A stretch of 64,000 bases of DNA from NCBI RefSeq assembly GCF_006345805.1, contig NC_042998.1, positions 177,754,001 to 177,818,000 on the forward strand, read 5' to 3'. Position 1 is the stretch's first letter; each line of letters starts with the position of its first letter. Below the pieces are notes generated by a model. The model saw only the letters and a program-made list of their open reading frames with translations, had not been told where the DNA came from and did not search any database. The translations under genes were made by a program, and so were the position numbers. Of this stretch, positions 347 to 64,000 are shown one piece after another. This DNA comes from Octopus sinensis. Its lineage: Eukaryota.

Positions 347-418
347 CTGATTCATTTTTTCTGTAAGGCTCCAACAAACGGTTCCTTTTCTTTTCATATC
401 CTTTCTGGGTAATATCAC
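347..418 (-). CDS. DIP2: DIP2 (disco-interacting protein 2) internal coding exon, probably exon 2; C-terminal half of the DMAP1-binding domain
   Basis: Minus strand reads ttttttatctag|GTGATATT...GAATCAG|gtattt: canonical acceptor and donor, 72 nt, phase 1 to phase 1. It translates (G)DITQKGYEKKRNRLLEPYRKNES, matching the conserved DIP2 motif ELSE-GDITQKGYEKKRxKLL. Confidence 0.95.
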
Positions 419-7197: not shown

Positions 7198-8009
7198 TGA
7201 GAGAAATGTTGAACCTAAGAAGCATCAGATGTGGTGTGCAAGAGAGACGACTGCACTGGTATGGTCATGTAGCAAGAATGGATGAGGACAGCTGAGTGAA
7301 AAAGTGCCATACCCTAGCAGTTGAGGGAACCTGTGGAAGAGGTAAACCCAGGATGACCTAGGATGAAGTGGTGAAGCACGACCTTCGAACTTTAGGCCTC
7401 ACCAAGGAAATGACTAGTGACCGAGACCTTTGGAAATATGCCATGTGTGAGAAGACCCGGCAAGCCAAATGAAACCATAATCTCATGGCCTATGCCAGGG
7501 GCGTAACCAGCCCACTTATGCGTACCTTTTCCTTCTTTGGACACAAAAACTCTGCTTGCGAAGACCTGTTGAGGCAAGTGAAATCAATCAAAATAAAAAT
7601 CAAATTCGATGACAGGCGTCCGTACTAGCAGGTTGCAAAGAGCACCATACGAGCGCGACCATTGACTGAGCGGCTAACCGGCTTCTGTGCCAGTGGAACA
7701 TAAAAGGGCACCATTCGAGCATGATCGTTACCAACGTCGCCTTACTGGCACCTGTGCTAGTGGCATGTGTAAAAAAATTCGAGCGAGGTCGTTGCCAGTA
7801 CCGCCTGACTAGCCCCCGTGCCGGTGGAATGTAAAAAGCACCCACTATACTCTCGGAGTGGTTGGCATTAGGAAGGGCATCCAGCTGTAGAAACTCTGCC
7901 AAATCAAGATTGGAGCCTGGTGCAGCCATCTGGTTCGCCAGCCCTCAGTCAAAATCGTCCAACCCATGCTAAGCATGGAAAGCGGACGTTAAACGATGAT
8001 GATGATGAT
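7198..8009 (+). mobile_element. 5'-truncated RTE-clade LINE (end of ORF, 3' UTR, (GAT)n tail)
   Basis: Closely similar to 20150-21013; contains CGVQERRLHWYGHVARMDED and ends in gatgatgatgat. Confidence 0.9.
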
Positions 8010-16839: not shown

Positions 16840-17343
16840 TCATTATCATCATCATCATTTAACGTCCATTGTCCATGCTGGCATGAGTGGGGCAGTTTGA
16901 CTGGGTTGGCCCACTTGAAGGCTGCACCAGACTCCAGTCTGATTTGGCATGGTTTCCTACAGTTGGATACTCTTCCTAATGCCAACCACTCCAAGAGCGT
17001 AATGGGTGCTTTTATGTGCCACCAGCACGGGTGCCATTTGTGTGACATGGGGGTGCATTTATATGCCACCAGCACAGGTGCCAAGGGAGGCTGGTAACAG
17101 CCATGATCGGTTGGTGCTTTTTAAGTGCCACTGGCATGGAAGCCAGTTAAGGTGGCGCTGGCATCAGCCACATTCGGATGGTGCTTTTTATGTGCTACTG
17201 GCACAGGTATCACAACTACAATTTCCATTTCATTTTTTGATGTTGATGTACTTGACTCAATAGGTCTCCTCAAGCACAGCAGGTTGCCCTACAATCCATG
17301 GTAAGCACAGCAGTTCTTCGCAGTCACAGCATATCTCCAGAGG

Positions 17344-19412: not shown

Positions 19413-21013
19413 CCAGGCAATAACGGAGGAATTCAAGACAGGATGCCCTTGGGAGCTCCTCTATGCTGATGACCTTGCTCTAATTGCTGAGTCGCTATCA
19501 GAACTGGAGGAAAAGTTTCAGGTGTGGAAACAAGGATTAGAATCGGAGGGCCTCAGAGTCAATCTAGCTAAAACCAAAGTCGTAATCAGTAGGAAGGTAG
19601 ACAAATCACAAACGCCTTCAGGTAGATGGCCCTGCTCGATCTGTAGAAAAGGTGTAGGTAGAAACTCTATAAGATGCACCAAGTGTAAGCTATGGACACA
19701 TAAGAGGTGCAGCAATGTCAAAGGAAGGCTAACTAGGAAGATGGTTTTTGTATGTGGCAGATGCTCAGGAACAATAAACACTGAAAATGCTCTGAGACCA
19801 ACTTCCGTCACTTTCCAGGGAGAAAAACTAGAAATAGTTGATAGTTTCCGTTACCTAGGTGACCAAGTCAGTAGCGGGGGCGGGTGTGCTGAAAGTGTAA
19901 CTGCTAGAGTAAGAATAGCTTGGGCAAAGTTCAGAGAGCTCTTACCTCTGCTGGTGACAAAAGGCCTCTCGCACAGAGTGAAAGGCAGACTGTATGATGC
20001 GTGTGTACGAACAGCCATGCTACATGGCAGTGAAACATGGGCCATGACTGCTGAGGATATGCGTAAGCTCGCAAGAAATGAAGCCAGTATGCTCCGATGG
20101 ATGTGTAATGTCAGTGTTCATAATCGACAGAGTGTAAGTACCTTGAGAGAAAAGCTGGACCTAAGAAGCATCAGTTGTGGTGTGCAAGAGAGACGATTGC
20201 GCTGGGTATGGTCATGTGACGAGAATGGATGAAGATAGTTGTGTGAAAAAGTGCCACACCCTAGCGGTTGAGGGAACCTGTGGAAGAGGCAGACCCAGGA
20301 AAACCTGGGACGAGGTGGTGAAGCACGACCTTCGAACTTTAGGTCTCACTGAGGAAATGACTAGAGACCGAGTCCTCTGGAAGTGTGCTGTGCGCGAGAA
20401 GACCCGGCAGGACAAGTGAGTCCATAACCCATGGCCTTCTACTTGGGATGGAGACAGCCTACGTATGCATACCTTCCCTTCTTGGGACACAAAACTCTAC
20501 TTGTGAAGACCTGTTGAGGCAAGTGAGGATCAGAATGGAAATCGATCAATGGAAATTGCAGATGTGTTACCAGTGCCGGTGGCATGTCGAAACTCTACTT
20601 GTGAAGACCCGTTGAGGCAAGTGAGGATCAGAATGGAAATCGATCAATGGAAATTGCAGATGTGTTACCAGTGCCGGTGGCATGTAAGAGAACCTTCCGT
20701 TTCGCGACCGTTGCCAGCACCGCCCCGTTTCGTGTCCATTGCCAGCCTCGCCTGGCCCTTGTGCCGGTGGCACATAAAAAGCACCATCCGTTCGTGGCCG
20801 TTTGCCAGCTCTGTCTGGCACCTGTGCGGGTGGCATGTAAAAAGCACCCACTACACTCACGGAGTGGTTGGCGTTAGGAAGGCATCCAGCCGTAGAAACA
20901 CTGCCAGATTTGACTGGGCCTGATGAAGCCTTCTGGCTTCACAGACCCCAGTAGAACCGTCCAACCCATGCTAGCATGGAAAACGGACGCTAAACGACGA
21001 TGATGATGATGAT
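19413..21013 (+). mobile_element. Young 5'-truncated RTE-clade LINE with RT C-terminus, embedded PHD-like finger, 3' UTR and (GAT)n tail
   Basis: LLYADDL motif at about 19458-19478, ORF 19522-20232, one frameshift near 20200, continuation in 20177-20419, and a 98-bp tandem duplication in the 3' UTR. Confidence 0.95.
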
Positions 21014-21014
21014 A

Positions 21015-21197
21015 TTGGTGCCCTGTAAAAAGCACTCAGTACACTGTAACGTGGGTAGCATTAGGAAGGGCATCTAACCATAGAAACCATGCCAAAGCAA
21101 ATAGTAAAGTTTGGTGCAGATTTCTGACTTGCCAGCTCCTACCATCCAACCCATGCCAGCATTATGGAAAACAGGAAATGATGATGATAATAATGAT
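21015..21197 (+). mobile_element. Older RTE 3' tail fragment
   Basis: ttaggaagggcatc...ccaacccatgccagca...(GAT)n-like end. Confidence 0.7.
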
Positions 21198-22226: not shown

Positions 22227-22850
22227 GGTTTCTAATGTAGGCAGAGGCTGCAAATTTTGAGGAAGTTTAATAAATAGCAATAATAATGGTTTCTGATTTA
22301 GGCATAAGACCAATAATTTTGAGGAGAATGAATTAGTTGATACTATTGACCCCAGTACTTTAATAGTACTTTATTTTATCAACCTCAGAAGGATGAAAGG
22401 TAAAGTCTGACATCAGCTGGATTTGAACTCAGACTGTCAAGAAACAAAATAATAATACAATATAAAGTGGAGTAAGAAAAGATGTTAAGCCTTTTTCCTA
22501 TGCTCTTCCAATACCAGCTCACCTGACCCCCATACTTGAATGATACTTTATTATACCAACCCTGAAAGGATGAAAGCAAAGTTGACTTTTGCAAGATTTG
22601 AACACCAAATGTAAAGAGCCATAACAAATATCACAAAGCACTGTTTCTGACACTAATGATTCCAACAATTTGCCATCCTAGGCCAAAAATTAGAAATTGG
22701 GAGGAGGAGGAGGCAGTCAATTATCTTGACCTAGTATTTAATTAGTACTTTATTTTTTTTTATCCACAGAAGGATGAAAGACAATGTTGACCTCAGTGGG
22801 ATTTAAACTCTGAACACAAGTACTGCAAGGCTTTTGTCTGATATTTATGC
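22227..22850 (-). mobile_element. Cluster of about three degenerate type B SINEs
   Basis: The motif aaggatgaaag...gatttgaactc recurs at about 22390, 22567 and 22770. Confidence 0.7.
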
Positions 22851-28530: not shown

Positions 28531-29164
28531 AGTACTGATTAACAAGCTCATGCAAGTAACCACTGCATATAAAAAAAATTACTGCATTATAATTTCTTCA
28601 TAGAAATGTAATAGTAATAAAATCCAACCACATGCAATTTGATGATCAATTTCATATTTGCAAATCTTCATCAACACTATATTACTTTGTACACAAACTA
28701 TAAATCCTTCAGAGTCAGACTGTATCATATAAACATATCTAGACAAAAATGTGGAATTTAGGAATGTGACATGAAGCCTCAGTAAAAACAAGAATAAAAC
28801 TAATATTGCTGTGTTGTATGTTTGACATTAATGTTTCTTTTGTCTTCACATTAACAGAGATAAGAATTTTTTCTTCATTCATTTTACATTTGCAAAATGG
28901 AGTGTTTTGCAGGAAGACCTACATACCTCATTATTTATACTTACAGAGTAGAGTATGTGTTATGAGATTTAATCATATATGATCATGTTAGATTGTCCAG
29001 AACTGTAACTTCATGGCCAGTGTCTATAGTCAGCAGCAATTACAAGTCATGACCCTTGAATTGAATATTTATGTAAATGAAAAAATGTGCCATAAGAACA
29101 TTATAACAATCTACATGATTAAGAAATGTAATAGTTGCAGATTTCAGCATTTACCCCAACTCAC

Positions 29165-29208
29165 CTTTTCTGTCCCTCTATCCCTATTCTCTTTCTCAAA
29201 TTTACCTG

Positions 29209-29258
<50 letters not shown>
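29165..29258 (-). promoter_or_regulatory. Candidate recursive splice site with a 41-nt RS/poison exon (29165-29205)
   Basis: Minus strand: (CT)24 tract, ccccAG|GTAAATTTGAGAAAGAGAATAGGGATAGAGGGACAGAAAAG|GTGAGT. The acceptor is immediately followed by a donor, with a second consensus donor 41 nt downstream, in the DIP2 sense orientation. Confidence 0.45.
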
Positions 29259-29260
<2 letters not shown>

Positions 29261-29388
29261 TGATAAGGAGACAAGAGCAGGTATCTTGCTGAAGAGGTGA
29301 ACACATGGTTGAGAGAGAGAGAGATGTGAGGTTTACCTTACATCTCTCTCTCTTCAGCAAGATACCTACTCCTGTCCGTTTATCACAC
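29259..29388. mobile_element. About 130-bp foldback/MITE-like element
   Basis: tgtgataaggagacaagagcaggtatcttgctgaagag is the near reverse complement of ctcttcagcaagatacctactcctgtccgtttatcaca; inner arms gagagagatgtgagg / ccttacatctctctc. Confidence 0.7.
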
Positions 29389-29419
29389 TATTTGCTATCC
29401 CTCAATATCCCACCCAGTT

Positions 29420-29615
29420 GAAGGATCTTGTCTTCTGAGTACTTAGTAACCTCACCAGTGTTGGTGCCACAAAAAAATGAACCCAGTACACTCTAATGAA
29501 GTTTTGGCATTAGGAATGGCACCAAGCTGTTAAAAACCATGCCAGAGCAGGCACTGTTGATTGGCACAGCCTGCTGATCAGCATGAAGAAAAAGGACATT
29601 AATAATAATGATTAT
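29420..29615 (+). mobile_element. Degenerate RTE-type 3' tail
   Basis: acccagtacactc...ggcattaggaatggca... similar to other RTE tails. Confidence 0.6.
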
Positions 29616-33693: not shown

Positions 33694-34965
33694 CAAAGTG
33701 GTGTCAAAAAGTTCCCAGACTAGTTTTGTAGCATGCCAACAGATGGCAGCACATGGTTGTGTGCACAGTGATAGCTAGTAGTGACTTTCATGAAGCAGTG
33801 AGCTGAGTGACATCACTGCTTACTTTGTGGTTGTGAAATTTGTGTTTGTGTGATTACGTGTATGCTGTAGTCTGCGATTTTACCTTGGACAGGAAGACAG
33901 AACAAAGAGCCAACATGAAACTTTGCATTAAACTTAAGATGTCTACAACAGAGCCATTGAGTATGCTTTAGCAAGCTTATAGCGATGAGGCAATGGGTCA
34001 TAAGTAACGTTTTGAGTGACATGGGCACTTCAAAAGAAGAAGAACATCTCTGGAAGACAATGAGCAATCTGGAAGACTTGCCATGAGTGTCACCCCCGAA
34101 AATGAGGAAAAACTTGTGCACAAGGATCATCGAAGGACAATCAACAACATTGCTGATGTTGTTGGTCTGTCATATGGGTCTGTGCAAGCAATCCTAACAT
34201 CTGAATTGGACATGCAGCAAGTCTATGCCAAGTTTGTCCCCTGCCTGCTGTCTACTGAGCAGAAAGAACATTGCAAAGTCTGTCAAAATCTCCGTCAGTG
34301 TGTTGCCGATGACCTATCCTTCATGTCAAGGATCATCACTGGTGACTTAGGTCTATAGGTATGACTCTCAGATGAAGCAACAGTTGTTACAATGAAAGGG
34401 CCCTTAATCTCCATGACCAAAGAAAGCACAACAGAGCCACAGCTCAATCAAAATCATGCTCATAATTTTTTTCAACATCTCCCAGGGTCAAACCTTCAAT
34501 CAAGAGTTTTACTGTGACATTTTGAAGCATTTGAGAGAGAACATTTGGCGAAAGCAACCAGATCTGTGGAGCGCGAAGAATTGGATTTTTCACAATGACA
34601 ATGCACCCTGTCACCGATCTCTCCTCACTCATGAGTTTCTTGCCAAAAACAACATGGTACCACTTCCACACCTGCCCTATTCGCCAGATTTAGCATCTGC
34701 AAACTTCCATCACTTTCCCAAGACGAAAATGCAGCTGAAAGGTCACCGTTTTAACACTCGTATTGATCAAGAGCGAATTGCAGAAGGTCCTTGATTCACT
34801 TTTGGAAAACAACTTCCAGACCGGATTCCAAAAGTGGCAGGAATGCTGGAACCAGTGTATTGCTGTGCAAAGTGACTATTTCAAAAGAGATGATGTTAAA
34901 ACTTAGGTAAATAAGTTATTTTCAATTAAACATAACTAGTCCAGGAACTTTTTGATACCACTTCA
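33694..34965 (+). mobile_element. Full-length (1272 bp) decayed mariner (Tc1/mariner) DNA transposon
   Basis: TA flanks at 33692-33693 and 34966-34967; inverted termini caaagtggtgtcaaaaagttcccagactagt / actagtccaggaactttttgataccacttca. Confidence 0.93.
33890..34908 (+). pseudogene. Mariner transposase pseudogene (DD34D type)
   Basis: EQRANMKLC...SLEDNEQSGR, IITGD, WIFHNDNAPCH and PYSPDLAS motifs lie in different frames with several stops. Confidence 0.9.
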
Positions 34966-45620: not shown

Positions 45621-45955
45621 CCTGACAGGTAGCATGCCAGTGGCACATAAAAAGCACTATGGGAGCATGGTTGTTGATAGTGTCACCTGTGTGGCTCACG
45701 TGCTTGTGCCATGTAAAAAGCACCATTCAGGCTTGTTCAATGCCAGCACCGCCTGACTGGCCCTCATGTTGGTGGCACATAAAAAGCACCCACTACCCTC
45801 TCAGAATCGTTGGCATTAGGAAGGGCATCCAGCTGTAGAAATCTTGCCAGATCACATTGGAGCCTTGCACAGCCTTCTGGCTTGCCAGTCCTCAGTCAAG
45901 CCGTTCGAGCTATGGCAGCCTGGAAAGCGGACATTAAACGACATTGATGATATGA
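45621..45955 (+). mobile_element. RTE 3' UTR and tail
   Basis: Repeated ...taaaaagcac modules, ttaggaagggcatccagctgtagaa, gaaagcggacattaaacgac. Confidence 0.85.
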
Positions 45956-47782: not shown

Positions 47783-47851
47783 ATTGTAACTGTACTTGTT
47801 GAAGTGCCTCAATTCTGTGCATGTACATATATTTATTTGATTGCTGACATT
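47783..47851. repeat. Left copy of a 69-bp direct repeat (partner 53834-53902)
   Basis: Hand alignment: 4 mismatches in 69 bp. Confidence 0.92.
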
Positions 47852-50843
47852 AAAGTTCGAAGGTCGTGCTTCACCACCTCGTCCCAGGTTTTCCTGGGTC
47901 TGCCTCTTCCACAGGTTCCCTCAACTGCTAGGGTGTGGCACTTTTTCACACAACTATCTTCATCCATTCTCGCCACATGACCATACCAGCGCAAATGTCT
48001 CTCTTGCACACCACATCTGATGCTTCTTAGGTCCAGCTTTTCTCTCAAGGTACTTACACTCTGTCAAGTATGAAACTGACATTACACATCCATCAGAGCA
48101 TACTGGCTTCATTTCTTGCGAGCTTACGCATATCCTCAGCAGTCATGGCCCATGTTTCACTGCCATATAGCATGGCTGTTCATACACAAGTGTCATACAG
48201 TCTGCCTTTTACTCTGAGCGAGAGGCCTTTTGTCACCAGCAGAGGTAAGAGCTCTCTGAACTTTGCCCAAGCTATTCTTACTCTAGCTGTTACACTTTCA
48301 GCACACCCACCCCCGCTACTGACTTGGTCACCTAGGTAAGGGAAGTTATCAACTATTTCTAGTTTTTCTCCCTGGAAAGTGACAGAAGTTGATCTCAGAG
48401 CATTTTCAGTGTTTATTGTGGCATCTGCCACATACAAAAACATACAAAAACTATCTTCCCAGTTAGCCTTCTTTTGACATTGCTGCACCTCTTATATGTC
48501 TTATGTGTCCATAGCTTACACTTGGTGCATCTTATAGAGTTTCTACCTACACCTTTCCTACAGATCGAGCAGGGCCATCTACCTGAAGGCGTTTGTGATT
48601 TGTCTACTTTCCTACTTATTAGGACTTTGGTTTTAGCTAGATTGACTCTAAGGCCCTTCGATTCTAATCCTTGCTTCCACACCTGAAACTTCTCCAGTTC
48701 TGATAGTGACTCAGCAATTAGAGCAAGGTCATCAGCATAGAGGAGCTCCCAAGGGCATCATGTCTTGAATTCCTCCATTATTGCCTGGAGGACTATGATA
48801 AATAGGAGGGGGCTGAGGACTGAGCCTTGGTGGACCACAACCTTTACCCAGAATTCTTCACTGTACGCGTTGCCAACCCTCACCTTACTAGCAGCGTCCC
48901 TGTACATGATAAGGGATCGGGGGACCCTGTCGAAGGCTTTCTCCATGTCAACAAAAGCCAGGAACAGGGGCTTATCTTTGGCTAGGTATTTCTCCTGCAG
49001 CTGCCTTACCAGGAATATAGCATCAGTGGTACTTTTCCCTGGCACAAACCCAAACTGCATCTCATCTAAACTAACTCTCTCTCTAACCTTCATTACCTGA
49101 TCCAACAGCTTGATGCCTCTGTAATTATATGTATCTAGGGTGTCACCTTTACCTTTGTAGCAGTTGACTATTATGCTGCTACACCAGTCATTGGGTATGA
49201 CTCCTTTGTGTATCACCTGATTAACTATACGGGTGACTAGGCTATAGCCGACACTCCCAGATATTTTGAGCATCTCTGCAGTGATTCCTGATGGGCCTGG
49301 GGCTTTCCCTGTCTTCATGCTTCTAATTGCCTTAACTACCAAGGAACTGTCAACTCAGATAGCTGGTCTCTCTGTTGGGTCAACATTCGGCAGACTCTCT
49401 TTATCCCATTCATTTTCTTTATTCAGCAACCTTTCATAGTGGCGTCTCCAAACCTCTTTCTTTGCATCCTCATTTAGCGCAAGTGAACCATCTTCCATGC
49501 AAACACACTTCTCTCCTACCACATCACAATTCTCTCTCACACACTGTCTTGCAACACAAAACACCTCCAGTCTTTGGTCCTCACGGCGCAGAACATTGGC
49601 AAATTTTTTCTTATCTGCTTCCCCTCTGGCTAGATAGACCTGTCTCCTAGCTTCCCTTTTGGCAGTCTGATACAATTCCCTGCTACCACCATTCTTCGAG
49701 TCCTTCCAAGCCTGTCTCTTTTCTCTAATAGCCCTGTCTACAACATTGTTCCACCACCACGTTACCTTGGGACAAGAGGGGACTTTGCACCAGCCACAGA
49801 TCTGGTCAGTGGCTCTCAGCAGGTTGTCCCTTAGAAACGTCCAGTTGCCTTCTACCCCATGTGATACTCTATCCCCTTCTACTTCGTCAAAGGCTTCAAG
49901 TAGCATGTCCCTAAATCTCTGTCCATTCGCAGGATCTTTAAGCTTCCAGATCTTTCTTCTCCATGTTGGTCGTCTTCTGGTTGTCCTCTTAGTCCTGATC
50001 CTAAAGTCACTAACTACTAGTCTATGTTGCGGGGTACATTCTTCGCCTGGGAAGGTTTTGGCATTTATAAGCAGCCATCTCTCCCTTTGTCTGGCAAGGA
50101 TGTAGTCAATTTGGCTGGTATGTTGGCCCGATCGGTAGGTGACTAGGTGGCTGGTAGGTTTCCTGAAGTTAGTGTTGCAAATCATAAGATTATTTGCATC
50201 GCAGAACTCCAGCAGCCTGGTTCCCTCCTCGTTGCAAGAACCATAGCCATAGCCTCCATGTACACCATGGAAGACCCAGCATGTCGTACAATGTGACCAT
50301 TGAAGTCACCAGCCATAAAGAGAAGGTCTCTGTCGTTTGTCAACGAGGTAGTCTGCAGTAGAGTGTCATAGAATCGGTCTTTCTGTCCATCGGGTAGCCC
50401 CGACTGAGGAGCATAGGCCGATATAATGGTTGCTAATCCATGATGAAGCACTAATCTAATCTTAAGTATTCTGTCACATACTCTGATTACCTCAATTACT
50501 TTATCTACCCATTTCTCAACGATAAGTATACCCATGCCACCAACCCCGTCAGTGTTCCCTGCCCAGAAAATCTTGTACCTGTGTTCTTGCCTGTGAGGAA
50601 CCTAGCAGATCCTCCTCTCCACCTTACCTCCTGCATGCAACATATATCAACACATCTCCGTTCAAGCATCTCGACTATCTCGCCAGACCTACCTTTCAGT
50701 ATGCCAACGTTGAGGGTGCCAAACCCGAGGGTGTGGGAGGTATGGGCCCTAGAGACCCTGGGACGGTGGACAGTAGCTTCATGTACCTGAAAAGAAAGCT
50801 CGCATTTGGCAAAATTCATGAGCAAGTAATACAGTAGCCTTCA
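47852..50843 (-). mobile_element. Near-complete RTE-clade LINE ORF (APE endonuclease, RT, PHD-like finger), frameshifted and lacking its 3' UTR
   Basis: TLNVGILKGR, CMQEVRW, GDFNGH, SQIDYIL, QHRLVVSD, APGPSG, YRGIKLL, QFGF, DMEKAFDRVP, HQGSVLSPLLF and YADDL motifs across ORFs from 50825 to 47833; stops abruptly at cgaacttt. Confidence 0.95.
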
Positions 50844-60194: not shown

Positions 60195-61500
60195 GTTGGA
60201 AAAATCTGTGGAAAAAAATACCTTGCAGTTTTTAGTTATTTCTCTTTAGGTTGTGAGTTCAAATTTCAGCAAGTTCAATTTTACCTTTCACTAATAATAA
60301 CAAGTAGCTCTCAAATTCTGGGGTTGGGTAAATCAATTACTACCCTGCAAAAGATTTGCAGCTTTGTGCCAACGTTAGAAACCATTGGCTTTGTGCCTAA
60401 ATTAGAAACTATTATTATTATCAGGCAGCAGCTGGCAGAATCATAAGCATGCCGGCCAAAAAGCTTAGTGGCATTTCGTCTGTCTTTGCGTTCTGTGTTC
60501 AGATTCCACCAAGGTCCACTTTGCCTTTCAGCCTTCTGGGGTAGATAAATTAAGTAACAGTGAAATACTGGGGGGGGGGGTCAATATAATCGACTAGTCC
60601 CATCCCACCAAATTTCTGGCCTTGTGTCTTAGGAAGAAAGGATTATTATTATTATTATGTAGCAGCTGGCAGAATCGTTAGCACACTGGGCAAAATGATT
60701 AGCAGCATTTTGTCCATCTTTACATTCTGAGTTCAAACGCCACCGAGGTCGAGTTTGCCTTACATCCTTTCAGGTCAATTAAATGAGTACTAGTTGAACA
60801 CTGGTGGCAATGTAATCAACTAGCCCCTTCCCCTCAAATTTCAGGCCTTGTGCTTATAGTAGAAAAGATTATTATTATTATTATTATTAGGTGGCAGCTG
60901 GCAGAATCGTTAGCACATTGGGCAAAATGATTAGCAATATTTCAACCATCTTCATGTTCTGAGTTCAAACACCACCGAGGTCAACATTACCTTTCATCCT
61001 TTTGGGTATATAAAACAAGAAGCATTTGAGTACTGGGATTGATGTAATCAATTTACCTACTTCCTCGAAATTGCTGGCCTTGTGCCAAAAATTGATATCA
61101 TCATCATTATTATTATTATTAAAGCTGTCAGTTGACTAAATGCTTTACAGTATTTATCTTTATTCTATATTCTGCATCTATTAGTATCTCTTTACATTCT
61201 CTGTTCAAACCCTACTGGGGCCAATTTTGGGGGGTGGAGTCAATAAAAAAAATGCCACTTAAGTATTGAAGTTGATTTAATCGATTACATCTTCACTTCC
61301 CAAATTTATGGCTTTTGTGCCTATGCAGAAATTATCATTATTATTATTATTATTATCATTGGGGTGGATGAGAGGCAGAAAGAGTTGTGTACTTCGTAAA
61401 AATGCTTTGCAGTATTCAGTTACATTCCAAGTTCAAATCTCACATGTAAGTCATACTGGGTCAATGCAATCGACTATCTGGGCCTATCGCCAAAGTCAGA
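60195..61500 (+). mobile_element. Head-to-tail array of about six type B SINEs separated by (ATT)n tails
   Basis: gcagctggcagaatc heads at about 60427, 60662 and 60894, each directly after an (ATT)n run; B-box gagttcaaa. Confidence 0.85.
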
Positions 61501-61589
61501 AATACTACTACTACTACTGCTGCTGCTATTACTACTACTATTACTACTTCCCCTTCCTCCTATTTGCATCATTAGATTATTAAAATATG

Positions 61590-62578
61590 TCTGGAACAGA
61601 AATACCTATCAAGATGCGCAAGCGACAAACATCGATGTCGTCCCGTACCCCTTCACACATAGTTAAGAGTTAGGAATGAATGAATGAGAGAGATAGAAAG
61701 AAAGAAGTAGAAAGGCAGACTGACAAGAGATAGTTTTGCTGTATTTAGAGAGAGAGAGAAGTAGACACATATATCTTCATTCATATTTGTTCATTTAAAA
61801 ATCTTATGCAGTGAAGCTAGCTCCATCCCTCATGCACTACTACTTTTCTTTGTCTTACATAAAGCTTGTTTGTACATACACGCATGCACTAACACAGACA
61901 CACACACTAGTTATTTACAACCACTATCGGTTCTGGTATTGCAAACATACACAACATACATTATTGATTGAACAACTAACAACAGTGAACAAAAAAACCT
62001 AGGCATTATTGTGTATGTGTGTGTGCGCGTATAGACACACACATATATACACGTGTGTGTGTATATGTGTATATATAGTGATGAGAGATGGAAATGTACA
62101 AATAAATTTATGCTTTATAATATTATAGAGATTCTGTTTCAGTTTACAAATATGGAAAATGCTTTTGTACGTGTAGAAACCAATATGCCAGCCAATGTGT
62201 GTGCGCGTGTATCTATGGATATATTATGTGCACACATGCATACATACAGACATACGTATATTATATATATATATAGATAGATAGATATATATATATATAA
62301 GCACACACATACAAATAATGAAAGAAATCCCGGATGCAGAAGCTACAGAAGACAAGTCTAGCAAAGACAACAGCAGCAGCAGGCCTGGACTACATAATGT
62401 CGAAATTTCCAGTAAGAAGAATCCAGACGTGCCAATACCACTGTAGATTTTAGGCGTGTGTCTTCTAGAAGGCGAATGATATAGACAATTTCACCGTGTT
62501 TATGCCAAGGATGATAAAAGCAAGAGCTTGGTGGGTTCCACCATGCACTTTTTATTGTTTTTCATTACGTCATGTGTC

Positions 62579-63700: not shown

Positions 63701-64000
63701 ACATACATGTATATATATCATCAGTTTATGTCCACTTTCAAAACCAGTATGGAAAACAGTTTGACAGGATTCAATGGGCTCTCATCCAATGTCTGTTTTT
63801 GTTTTACTTTCCTAACACCAACAACTTTACAGAGGGTATTGGGTACATTTTTCATAGCACCAGCACTATAGAGGTTGTCATGTTTTCAGCATAACTAATG
63901 AGTCCTGCATTGTTGCAGTTTGGATCAATTACTGAATAGAGTGTACGGGGTGCTTTTTGTGACATAAGCACTGGGGAGTCACCTTGCAGCTTGGATGGAA

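What the first reader, a model, noticed from the sequence alone, without database searches (positions are those of the whole stretch)
29165..29258. Candidate recursive splice site with an RS/poison exon near the middle of the DIP2 intron
Seen in gene-sense orientation: branch-like CTTAT, a 48-nt (CT)n tract, ccccAG followed immediately by GTAAAT, a purine-rich 41-nt segment, and a consensus AAG|GTGAGT donor. It splits the roughly 61-kb intron into about 32 and 29 kb. Established: Drosophila and vertebrate recursive sites in long neural-gene introns have this AG|GT plus downstream-donor (RS-exon) architecture. Inference: skipping via the regenerated donor leaves the mRNA intact, while inclusion (phase 1 in, phase 0 out) shifts the frame and would be an NMD switch. 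I know of no description of this in a mollusc, but cannot check.
Basis: partly seen in the sequence, partly recalled or inferred. Interest (0 to 1): 0.75.

Follow-up and report, generated by a model that had tools for sequence, protein, structure and literature searches.

The report
Microsatellite-built pseudo-exon in DIP2 intron
The splice-site-like motif is really there and is the strongest exon look-alike in this long DIP2 intron, but it is built from a simple CT repeat and its flank. Its two donor sites have the wrong relative strengths for recursive splicing, and no RNA or cross-species evidence could be reached, so it is most likely an accidental pseudo-exon.

Summary
The motif is confirmed base for base on the minus (gene-sense) strand. 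It reads CTTAT, then a perfect (CT)24 inside a 51-nt pyrimidine run, then ccccAG|GTAAAT, then a 41-nt segment that is 83% purine, then AAG|GTGAGT. DIP2 exon 2 lies 28.7 kb downstream, and the phase arithmetic (1 in, 0 out) is correct.

With a crude PWM, this is the best acceptor in the window on either strand and the best pseudo-exon. But strong pseudo-exons are common here: a SINE-derived one at 22561 scores nearly as high. The feature specific to recursive splicing, AG followed by a usable GT, is expected by chance at about 1-6% of such acceptors.

- **Donor strengths.** The regenerated donor (xxG|GTAAAT) is much weaker than the downstream GTGAGT. This reverses the relation that published work ties to efficient recursive splicing, so the 41 nt would be included rather than ratcheted out.
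- **Branch point.** There is no A within 52 nt of the AG. The branch-like A sits at the base of a -78 kcal/mol hairpin.
- **Intron size.** The canonical DIP2 exon 1 is not in the window, so the "61-kb intron, mid-point" claim is unverified.
- **Missing evidence.** Conservation and RNA evidence could not be reached.

Verdict: most likely a fortuitous pseudo-exon (about 0.6). A regulated poison exon (about 0.17) and a true recursive site (about 0.12) remain open.

The parts
29263..29267 (-). Branch-point-like CTTAT (A at 29264), 58 nt upstream of the AG. The only other nearby adenines are at -55 and -53.
   Evidence: In the 461-nt fold, P(unpaired) for A29264 is 0.00, because it lies in the basal helix of hairpin A.
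29208..29258 (-). 51-nt uninterrupted pyrimidine run. It consists of a perfect (CT)24 microsatellite (29211-29258) plus CCC(C).
   Evidence: TRF reports (GA)24 with 100% matches. It is the longest Y-run in the window. There is no AG between -79 and the acceptor.
29200..29207 (-). Juxtaposed acceptor and donor, AG|GTAAAT. The first base after the AG is 29205.
   Evidence: The 3'ss PWM is 15.5, top of 7,561 AGs on both strands. The normalised composite score is 0.89. The donor part lacks +5G.
29165..29205 (-). 41-nt segment, 83% purine (the putative RS, poison or pseudo-exon). It has no stop codon in the entering frame, and inclusion shifts the frame of exon 2.
   Evidence: It pairs with the (CU)24 tract as an imperfect hairpin (dG -31.3) that leaves AG|GU in the loop.
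29159..29167 (-). Consensus-like donor AAG|GTGAGT.
   Evidence: PWM 8.4, among the top 3 of 3,929 sense-strand GTs. U1 duplex -10.7 kcal/mol.
29257..29392 (-). Long near-perfect hairpin directly upstream of the CT tract. Its 3' basal helix contains the branch-like sequence.
   Evidence: dG -78.3 kcal/mol. z = -7.9 against shuffles. The inverted repeat was also found by self-BLAST. Rfam gave only sub-threshold generic hairpin hits.
347..418 (-). DIP2 exon 2 (72 nt, part of the DMAP1-binding domain). This is the true downstream exon and is entered in phase 1.
   Evidence: Homologues carry PF06464, and their sequences show the ...LSEG|DITQKGYEKKR junction.
61606..61660 (-). Unverified.
   Evidence: Local CpG o/e is 0.7-0.8 against 0.27 window-wide, the only hint in its favour.

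Best explanation
This is a fortuitous pseudo-exon. A (CT)n microsatellite sits on the transcribed strand of the long intron upstream of DIP2 exon 2. Its GA-rich complementary flank happens to provide an excellent pyrimidine tract, an AG, a purine-rich 41-nt body and a GTGAGT donor. The AG happens to be followed by GT.

It is probably silent, or used only at noise level. If the spliceosome does use it, exon definition followed by donor competition would include the 41 nt. That shifts the DIP2 frame and makes a nonsense-mediated-decay substrate; it would not ratchet the intron out seamlessly.

Shown here: the sequence anatomy, the scores, the predicted structures and the frame consequences. Inferred: silence or noise-level use, and the absence of selection.
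For: 1. The tract is a 100% pure dinucleotide repeat. That is the signature of ongoing slippage rather than of a base-by-base conserved signal (established knowledge of microsatellites).

2. The tract and the 41-nt 'exon' are two arms of an imperfect inverted repeat (dG -31.3; generic hairpin hits). The pyrimidine tract and the purine-rich body are therefore not independent coincidences. A purine-rich context also raises the chance of AAG|GTGAGT about 10-fold in Markov simulations (2.4e-4 against 2e-5).

3. Strong pseudo-exons are common in this very intron. There are 21 on the sense strand at relaxed cut-offs, including a SINE-derived one at 22561 scoring 19.1 against 23.9. Only the AG|GT juxtaposition is special, and it is expected at about 1-6% of acceptors.

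4. The regenerated donor is far weaker than the downstream donor. This is the reverse of what functional cryptic RS-exons show (PMC8605326; PMC6224609).

5. No adenine lies within 52 nt of the AG. The three candidate branch adenines sit in the basal helix of a -78 kcal/mol hairpin.

6. CUCUCU repeats are the classic binding motif of PTB-type splicing repressors (established knowledge from vertebrates, not tested here).
Against: By my scoring, the site is the single best acceptor and best pseudo-exon in 64 kb on either strand, and the only intronic AG|GT with a normalised composite score above 0.85.

It lies in the kind of intron where recursive sites are usual in flies: very long, in a neural gene, and the first coding intron (PMC6110457).

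GTAAAT is no weaker than the gene's own exon-2 donor GTATTT, so the regenerated donor is usable.

The basal helix that holds the branch A is A/U-rich and could be opened. Distant branch points with AG-exclusion zones are known, and the zone here is intact.

My PWMs are approximate metazoan values recalled from memory. They are not trained on this species and are not MaxEntScan.

No conservation or expression data were available, so the absence of function is inferred, not shown.
Confidence: 0.6

Rival explanations
1. This is a regulated poison (NMD-switch) or cryptic exon. The 41-nt exon is defined by the strong acceptor, the purine-rich enhancer-like body and the GTGAGT donor. It is normally repressed, for example by a PTB-like protein on the CU repeat or by the RNA structures. 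When included, it shifts the DIP2 frame and lowers DIP2 output.
For: The splice-site pair is the best in the window. The body is 83% purine, resembling GAR-type enhancers (established knowledge). At 41 nt it shifts the frame, with no stop inside the exon or exon 2. The downstream donor out-scores the regenerated one, and EJC deposition would favour inclusion further (PMC6224609). A distant branch point plus a long CU tract with an intact AG-exclusion zone is the layout of several PTB-regulated vertebrate exons (established knowledge).
Against: There is no transcript or conservation evidence. Classic poison exons are highly conserved, whereas this one hangs on a pure, presumably length-polymorphic microsatellite. 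Exons of 41 nt are poorly defined without special factors (established knowledge). Chance pseudo-exons of similar strength occur in the same intron.
Confidence: 0.17
2. This is a true recursive splice site of the RS-exon type. Exon 1 is first joined to 29205. The regenerated xxG|GTAAAT donor is then used to remove the 41 nt and the remaining 28.7 kb, leaving no trace in the mRNA.
For: AG|GT is juxtaposed with a very strong pyrimidine tract and a downstream donor at +41. This matches the RS-exon architecture described for flies and vertebrates. The intron is at least 63.6 kb, and most fly introns above 40 kb contain such sites (PMC6110457). It is the only plausible candidate in the 63 kb of intron visible here.
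Against: The RS-5'ss is much weaker than the RS-exon 5'ss (PWM 1.4-2.9 against 8.4; U1 duplex about -6.5 against -10.7 kcal/mol). Recursive sites in flies and mammals generally show the opposite, and experimentally weakening the RS donor converts skipping into inclusion (PMC8605326; PMC6224609). The regenerated donor also lacks +5G. The hallmark ultraconservation could not be tested, and it is hard to reconcile with a pure microsatellite. The mid-intron position is unverified. No report of recursive splicing in molluscs, cephalopods or DIP2 was found in the library.
Confidence: 0.12
3. The element acts at another level than splice-site choice. Candidates are the (GA)n·(TC)n tract as a GAGA-factor or H-DNA (triplex) element in chromatin, the adjacent hairpin as a small-RNA precursor or ADAR substrate, or the pseudo-exon as a decoy that stalls splicing.
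For: The polypurine/polypyrimidine tract is perfect. A very stable 136-nt hairpin adjoins it. Sub-threshold matches to miRNA-precursor models show only that it is hairpin-shaped.
Against: No match reached any Rfam gathering score. There are no other copies in the window. Nothing specific points to any of these roles, and none is testable here.
Confidence: 0.05

Closest known systems
Drosophila intronic ratchet points with cryptic RS-exons (Ubx, kuz, Bx; Hatton 1998, Burnette 2005, Duff 2015, Joseph 2018/2021, Pai 2018)
   Same: Both have a juxtaposed (Y)nAG|GT inside a very long intron of a neural or developmental gene. Both have a short out-of-frame cryptic exon (about 50 nt there, 41 nt here) closed by a downstream donor. 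In both, the exon body need not be conserved.
   Different: In flies the ratchet-point donor is generally stronger than the RS-exon donor, and the AG|GT motif is ultraconserved (PMC8605326). Here the regenerated donor is clearly the weaker one, the tract is a pure dinucleotide microsatellite, and conservation is unknown.
Vertebrate RS-exons (Sibley 2015; Blazquez 2018)
   Same: The logic is the same: the exon is defined first, then the regenerated 5'ss competes with the downstream 5'ss. Both occur in long brain-expressed genes, and inclusion gives a frame-disrupting isoform.
   Different: Efficient recursion there requires a strong RS-5'ss, and the EJC otherwise enforces inclusion (PMC6224609). 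By that rule this site would behave as an included exon, not as a cryptic recursive one.
Poison / NMD-switch cassette exons (Lareau 2007; Ni 2007)
   Same: Both are short, frame-shifting exons that are normally skipped and sit in a regulatory gene.
   Different: Known poison exons are defined by observed inclusion, NMD sensitivity and usually extreme conservation. None of these was shown here.
Intronic pseudo-exons and repeat-derived cryptic splice sites (e.g. the polymorphic (TG)m(T)n tract at CFTR exon 9; Alu/SINE exonisation)
   Same: In both, simple or dispersed repeats supply a splice-competent signal by accident. A second, SINE-derived example lies in the same intron at 22561.
   Different: This one additionally has GT directly after the AG, which gives it the formal recursive-site look.
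PTB-repressed exons with long CU-rich tracts and distant branch points (alpha-tropomyosin exon 3, alpha-actinin, c-src N1)
   Same: Both show a CU-repeat tract, a branch point more than 50 nt upstream and an intact AG-exclusion zone.
   Different: PTB-type regulation has not been shown for this organism or this site. The comparison rests on my own knowledge of vertebrate cases.

Membership tests
Recursive splice site / cryptic RS-exon | [quoted passage not shown] | tested here: met
   ccccAG|GTAAAT at 29210..29200. It has the top composite PWM among 425 AGGT sites scored on both strands, and a normalised score of 0.89.
Recursive splice site / cryptic RS-exon | Lies inside a very long intron (flies: the longest ~3% of introns, and most introns above 40 kb carry such sites) | tested here: met
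   Exon 2 is at 418..347, and no canonical exon 1 lies in the remaining 63.6 kb. The criterion comes from PMC6110457.
Recursive splice site / cryptic RS-exon | Short downstream cryptic exon closed by a 5' splice site (exon definition) | tested here: met
   A 41-nt segment followed by AAG|GTGAGT, PWM 8.4. The criterion comes from PMC8605326.
Recursive splice site / cryptic RS-exon | The regenerated RS-5'ss is strong enough to out-compete the RS-exon 5'ss | tested here: not met
   PWM 1.4-2.9 against 8.4, and U1 duplex -6.2 to -6.8 against -10.7 kcal/mol. The requirement is stated in PMC6224609 and PMC8605326. Caveats: the PWM is approximate and the last 3 nt of exon 1 are assumed.
Recursive splice site / cryptic RS-exon | Strong evolutionary conservation of the AG|GT motif | not testable with these tools
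   No orthologous DNA could be reached. Exact ORF look-ups found nothing. The homology search with the ORF spanning the site found nothing. The metagenome scan found nothing.
Recursive splice site / cryptic RS-exon | Splicing intermediates: saw-tooth coverage, exon-to-RS junction reads, recursive lariats | not testable with these tools
Recursive splice site / cryptic RS-exon | Tendency to lie near the intron midpoint | tested here: inconclusive
   The downstream part is 28.7 kb. The upstream part is 32.4 kb only if the unverified exon at 61660..61606 is real, and otherwise at least 34.8 kb with no upper bound.
Poison (NMD-switch) exon | Inclusion introduces a frameshift or premature stop | tested here: met
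   41 nt, phase 1 in and phase 0 out. The exon-2 frame is shifted, reading GKFEKENRDRGTEKVILPRKDMKRKG....
Poison (NMD-switch) exon | Observed regulated inclusion and NMD sensitivity; usually high conservation | not testable with these tools
   No transcript or comparative data could be reached.
Microsatellite | Tandem array of a 1-6 nt unit | tested here: met
   TRF reports (GA)24 at 29211-29258 with 100% matches and score 96.
Rfam miRNA precursor families | Score at or above the family gathering threshold | tested here: not met
   The best hit scores 34.7 bits against a gathering score of 80 (MIR533). All hits are generic hairpin matches.

The most novel reading that the evidence does not exclude
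The site is a genuine recursive or RS-exon splice site in the giant first coding intron of a cephalopod DIP2 gene. It would be the first documented in a lophotrochozoan. Its pyrimidine tract would be a length-variable (CT)n microsatellite. The balance between the regenerated GTAAAT donor and the stronger downstream donor, possibly gated by the adjacent dsRNA hairpin or a PTB-like protein, would set how much DIP2 mRNA is diverted to a frame-shifted, NMD-targeted isoform.
Probability: 0.12. Interest if true: 0.65.

Novelty: new member of a known kind. Interest (0 to 1): 0.27.

Why it matters
If it were functional, it would extend recursive or RS-exon splicing to molluscs. That would show that very long neural introns in cephalopods are handled as in flies and vertebrates, and it would offer a natural case where a polymorphic microsatellite tunes a splice decision in a conserved neuronal gene.

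As it stands, the finding mainly illustrates a caution. In AT-rich, repeat-laden introns, microsatellites and SINEs readily generate high-scoring pseudo-exons, and an AG|GT juxtaposition on one of them is expected by chance in a few percent of cases. Motif-only calls of recursive sites therefore need RNA or conservation support.

Tried and rejected
1. **Repeat membership.** Self-BLAST of 28800-29600 found no other copy of the site or of hairpin A in the window. Only microsatellite matches and a neighbouring SINE (~29451-29610) turned up, and that SINE is a separate element. I therefore rejected 'part of a dispersed repeat' for the site itself.

2. **Local duplication.** I tested whether the 41-nt segment is a diverged direct copy of the 5' arm of hairpin A. 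The local alignment score was 13 against shuffles of 10.1 ± 1.9 (p about 0.1), which is not significant. Three GGTAAA within 183 nt is suggestive but post hoc.

3. **Rfam.** All hits were below gathering scores.

4. **Orthologous or other-individual DNA.**
   - Four exact ORF look-ups gave nothing.
   - A homology search with the ORF spanning the site gave nothing.
   - An exact 26-mer scan of metagenome contigs gave nothing.

5. **The gene's real N-terminus.**
   - The word-index search returned only five short DIP2 N-termini from other animals.

6. **Literature.** No paper in the library links recursive splicing to DIP2, octopus, molluscs or cephalopods. DIP2 is not in the held supplementary files of Pai et al. 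2018.

7. **Naive joint probability.** My first estimate, that everything coincides at one Y-run (2e-5 to 2.4e-4), overstates the surprise. Strong pseudo-exons are common here, so I replaced it with the conditional AG|GT probability.

Full report
**Orientation and gene.** The gene runs on the minus strand. At 418..347 there is a 72-nt exon, tatctAG|GTGATATT...AATCAG|gtattt. It encodes (G)DITQKGYEKKRNRLLEPYRKNES. This is the second half of the DMAP1-binding domain of DIP2. Short DIP2 N-termini retrieved from other animals, including two gastropods, read ...LP.DVRE.LAELDLELSEG|DITQKGYEKKR and carry PF06464. The Gly codon is split G|GT, so exon 2 is entered in phase 1. I could not verify the species.

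**Check of the observation.**
- CTTAT lies at 29267..29263.
- A perfect (CT)24 is reported by TRF as (GA)24 at 29211-29258 with 100% matches.
- The tract sits in a 51-nt pyrimidine run, the longest in the window.
- ccccAG|GTAAAT follows, with 29205 the first base after the AG.
- The next 41 nt (29205..29165) are 83% purine.
- AAG|GTGAGT follows, with the donor G at 29164.
- Inclusion after a phase-1 exon gives GKFEKENRDRGTEK and then reads exon 2 out of frame, with no stop inside either.
- The donor lies 28.7 kb upstream of the exon-2 acceptor.

**What is not confirmed.** The '61-kb intron' is unverified. The conserved exon-1 peptide is not encoded anywhere in the window (regex and tblastn). 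The canonical intron therefore extends beyond position 64000 and is at least 63.6 kb. It is one of about 40 ATG-ORF...G|GT phase-1 candidates upstream of the site. No protein in the 1.8-billion representative library covers it. A locally raised CpG o/e (0.7-0.8 against 0.27) is the only hint in its favour.

**How unusual is the motif?** I scored splice sites with approximate metazoan position weight matrices written from memory. They are neither species-trained nor MaxEntScan, so treat the scores as ranks.
- The acceptor scores 15.5, the best of all 7,561 AGs on both strands. The real exon-2 acceptor scores 9.5.
- The downstream donor scores 8.4, among the top 3 of 3,929 sense-strand GTs.
- The composite AG|GT score is the highest of 425 AGGT sites.
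- In a Pai-style normalised score, only this site (0.890) and the real exon-2 acceptor (0.894) exceed 0.85 on the sense strand.
- As a pseudo-exon it ranks first, with a summed score of 23.9.

Markov simulations of the sequence after a long Y-run gave a joint probability of 2e-5 to 2.4e-4 for 'AG within 10 nt, followed by a GT at least this donor-like, plus a donor of at least 8.4 within 25-120 nt'. That number overstates the surprise. Strong pseudo-exons are common in this intron: 21 on the sense strand at relaxed cut-offs. One SINE-derived example at 22561 (39 nt, containing a stop codon) scores 19.1.

The only feature specific to recursive splicing is GT directly after the AG.
- Any GT follows 5.7% of AGs (206 of 3,612).
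- A GT at least as good as GTAAAT follows about 1-2.4%.

Genome-wide, repeat-built pseudo-exons with an accidental AG|GT should therefore number in the hundreds or more. This is my inference from these rates.

**Anatomy around the site.** Immediately upstream in gene sense lies a 136-nt near-perfect hairpin (29392..29257). Its dG is -78.3 kcal/mol, and z is -7.9 against dinucleotide shuffles for the 271-nt context. It also appears as inverted repeats in self-BLAST.

The (CT)24 tract contains no adenine. The nearest adenines to the AG are at -53, -55 and -58, and all three lie in the basal helix of that hairpin. P(unpaired) for the CTTAT adenine is 0.00. That basal helix is short and A/U-rich, so this is a handicap rather than a block. 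The AG-exclusion zone is intact, with the nearest upstream AG at -79.

The tract also pairs with the 41-nt purine segment (dG -31.3), leaving AG|GU in the loop. The 'pyrimidine tract' and the 'purine-rich exon' are thus two arms of one imperfect inverted repeat, not independent features. Rfam gives only sub-threshold generic hairpin matches. The site and the hairpin are single-copy in the window. A SINE copy begins about 60 nt further upstream in gene sense (~29451-29610) and is a separate element.

**Mechanistic reading.** Published work defines the class as follows.
- A tandem acceptor|donor sits at the start of a short cryptic exon that is defined first.
- The regenerated donor then competes with the exon's own donor.
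- In flies and mammals the regenerated donor is generally the stronger.
- Weakening it in vivo converts seamless skipping into inclusion of the frame-changing exon (PMC8605326).

Here the relation is reversed:

| Donor | PWM | U1 duplex (kcal/mol) |
|---|---|---|
| Regenerated xxG\|GTAAAT (no +5G; depends on the last three exon-1 bases) | 1.4-2.9 | -6.2 to -6.8 |
| Downstream AAG\|GTGAGT | 8.4 | -10.7 |
| Real exon-2 donor CAG\|GTATTT | 0.7 | -7.2 |

GTAAAT is not unusable, since it matches the gene's real exon-2 donor. But in direct competition over 41 nt the expectation is inclusion, which means a frameshift. Constitutive use of this acceptor would therefore damage DIP2 output.

That argues the site is either largely silent or a deliberately repressed poison exon. 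Silence could come from a distant, structured branch region, from a CU repeat that resembles the binding motif of PTB-type repressors, and from a 41-nt exon near the lower limit for exon definition. These last points are established knowledge from other animals and were not tested here.

**Weighing.**
- Fortuitous pseudo-exon, silent or used only at noise level: 0.6.
- Regulated poison exon: 0.17.
- True recursive site: 0.12.
- Other roles (chromatin or H-DNA element, small-RNA or ADAR hairpin, decoy exon): 0.05.

The case against pure chance is that this is the single best candidate in at least 63 kb of a very long intron of a neural gene, the kind of intron where flies almost always have such sites (PMC6110457). 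The case for chance rests on three points: the microsatellite and inverted-repeat origin, the reversed donor hierarchy, and the high background of pseudo-exons.

**What could not be done.** Every route to related DNA failed.
- Four exact ORF look-ups found nothing.
- The homology search with the ORF spanning the site found nothing.
- The exact 26-mer scan of metagenome contigs found nothing.

The paper library holds nothing that links recursive splicing to DIP2, octopus, molluscs or cephalopods. If the site were real it would be new for the clade. But absence of literature is not evidence for function.

**Verdict.** This is a real and locally outstanding splice-like motif, correctly described. 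As a recursive splice site it meets the architectural criteria, fails the donor-competition criterion, and is untested on conservation and intermediates. It is best filed as another instance of a repeat-generated pseudo-exon that formally mimics an RS-exon. It is worth a quick look in total RNA-seq but is not a discovery on sequence grounds alone.

Noticed in passing
window 29257-29392 (minus strand = gene sense): A 136-nt near-perfect hairpin (dG -78.3 kcal/mol) with a (GA)n/(CT)n core, single-copy in the window. It would form long dsRNA in the pre-mRNA, making it a possible ADAR substrate, small-RNA precursor or fold-back element. Only sub-threshold Rfam hairpin hits were found.
   Followed up: partly
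window 19413-20341 (+) and 47851-48788 (-): Two inverted copies of a non-LTR retrotransposon fragment, 93% identical over 948 bp. They flank the candidate site at about 9 and 19 kb. In the pre-mRNA they are complementary and could loop out about 27.5 kb of intron. The larger copy region (48180-50825, minus strand) carries an RVT_1 domain, and the 19522-20232 ORF carries a PHD finger.
   Followed up: partly
window 22523-22561 (minus strand): The second-strongest pseudo-exon of the intron. It reads ...tttgctttcatcctttcAG|GGTTGG...GGTCAG|gtgagc, is 39 nt and contains an in-frame TAA. It appears to derive from the same SINE family that is scattered through the window.
   Followed up: partly
window ~29451-29610, 45767-45879, 16919-17033, 7833-7901, 21015-21099; 60410-61121: A SINE-like family with a conserved GGCATTAGGAAGGGCATCCAGCTGTAGAAA core and a (GAT)n tail occurs at least five times. 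A 232-bp-period tandem array of a related unit lies at 60410-61121.
   Followed up: partly
window 347-418 (minus strand): The real DIP2 exon 2 itself begins with GT (AG|GTGATA). It has the same normalised recursive-motif score (0.894) as the candidate, so it is formally an 'annotated RS-exon'-type start. Its regenerated donor G|GTGATA is weak.
   Followed up: no
window 61500-62500: CpG observed/expected rises to 0.65-1.1 against 0.27 for the whole window.
   Followed up: no
window 20492-20685: A 98-bp unit is tandemly duplicated at 98% identity inside the retrotransposon-rich block.
   Followed up: no
window 34083-34794 (+): Two adjacent ORFs look by eye like remnants of a mariner/Tc1-type transposase (...HNDNAPCH...YSPDLA...). 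Pfam gave no hit at E <= 0.01.
   Followed up: partly
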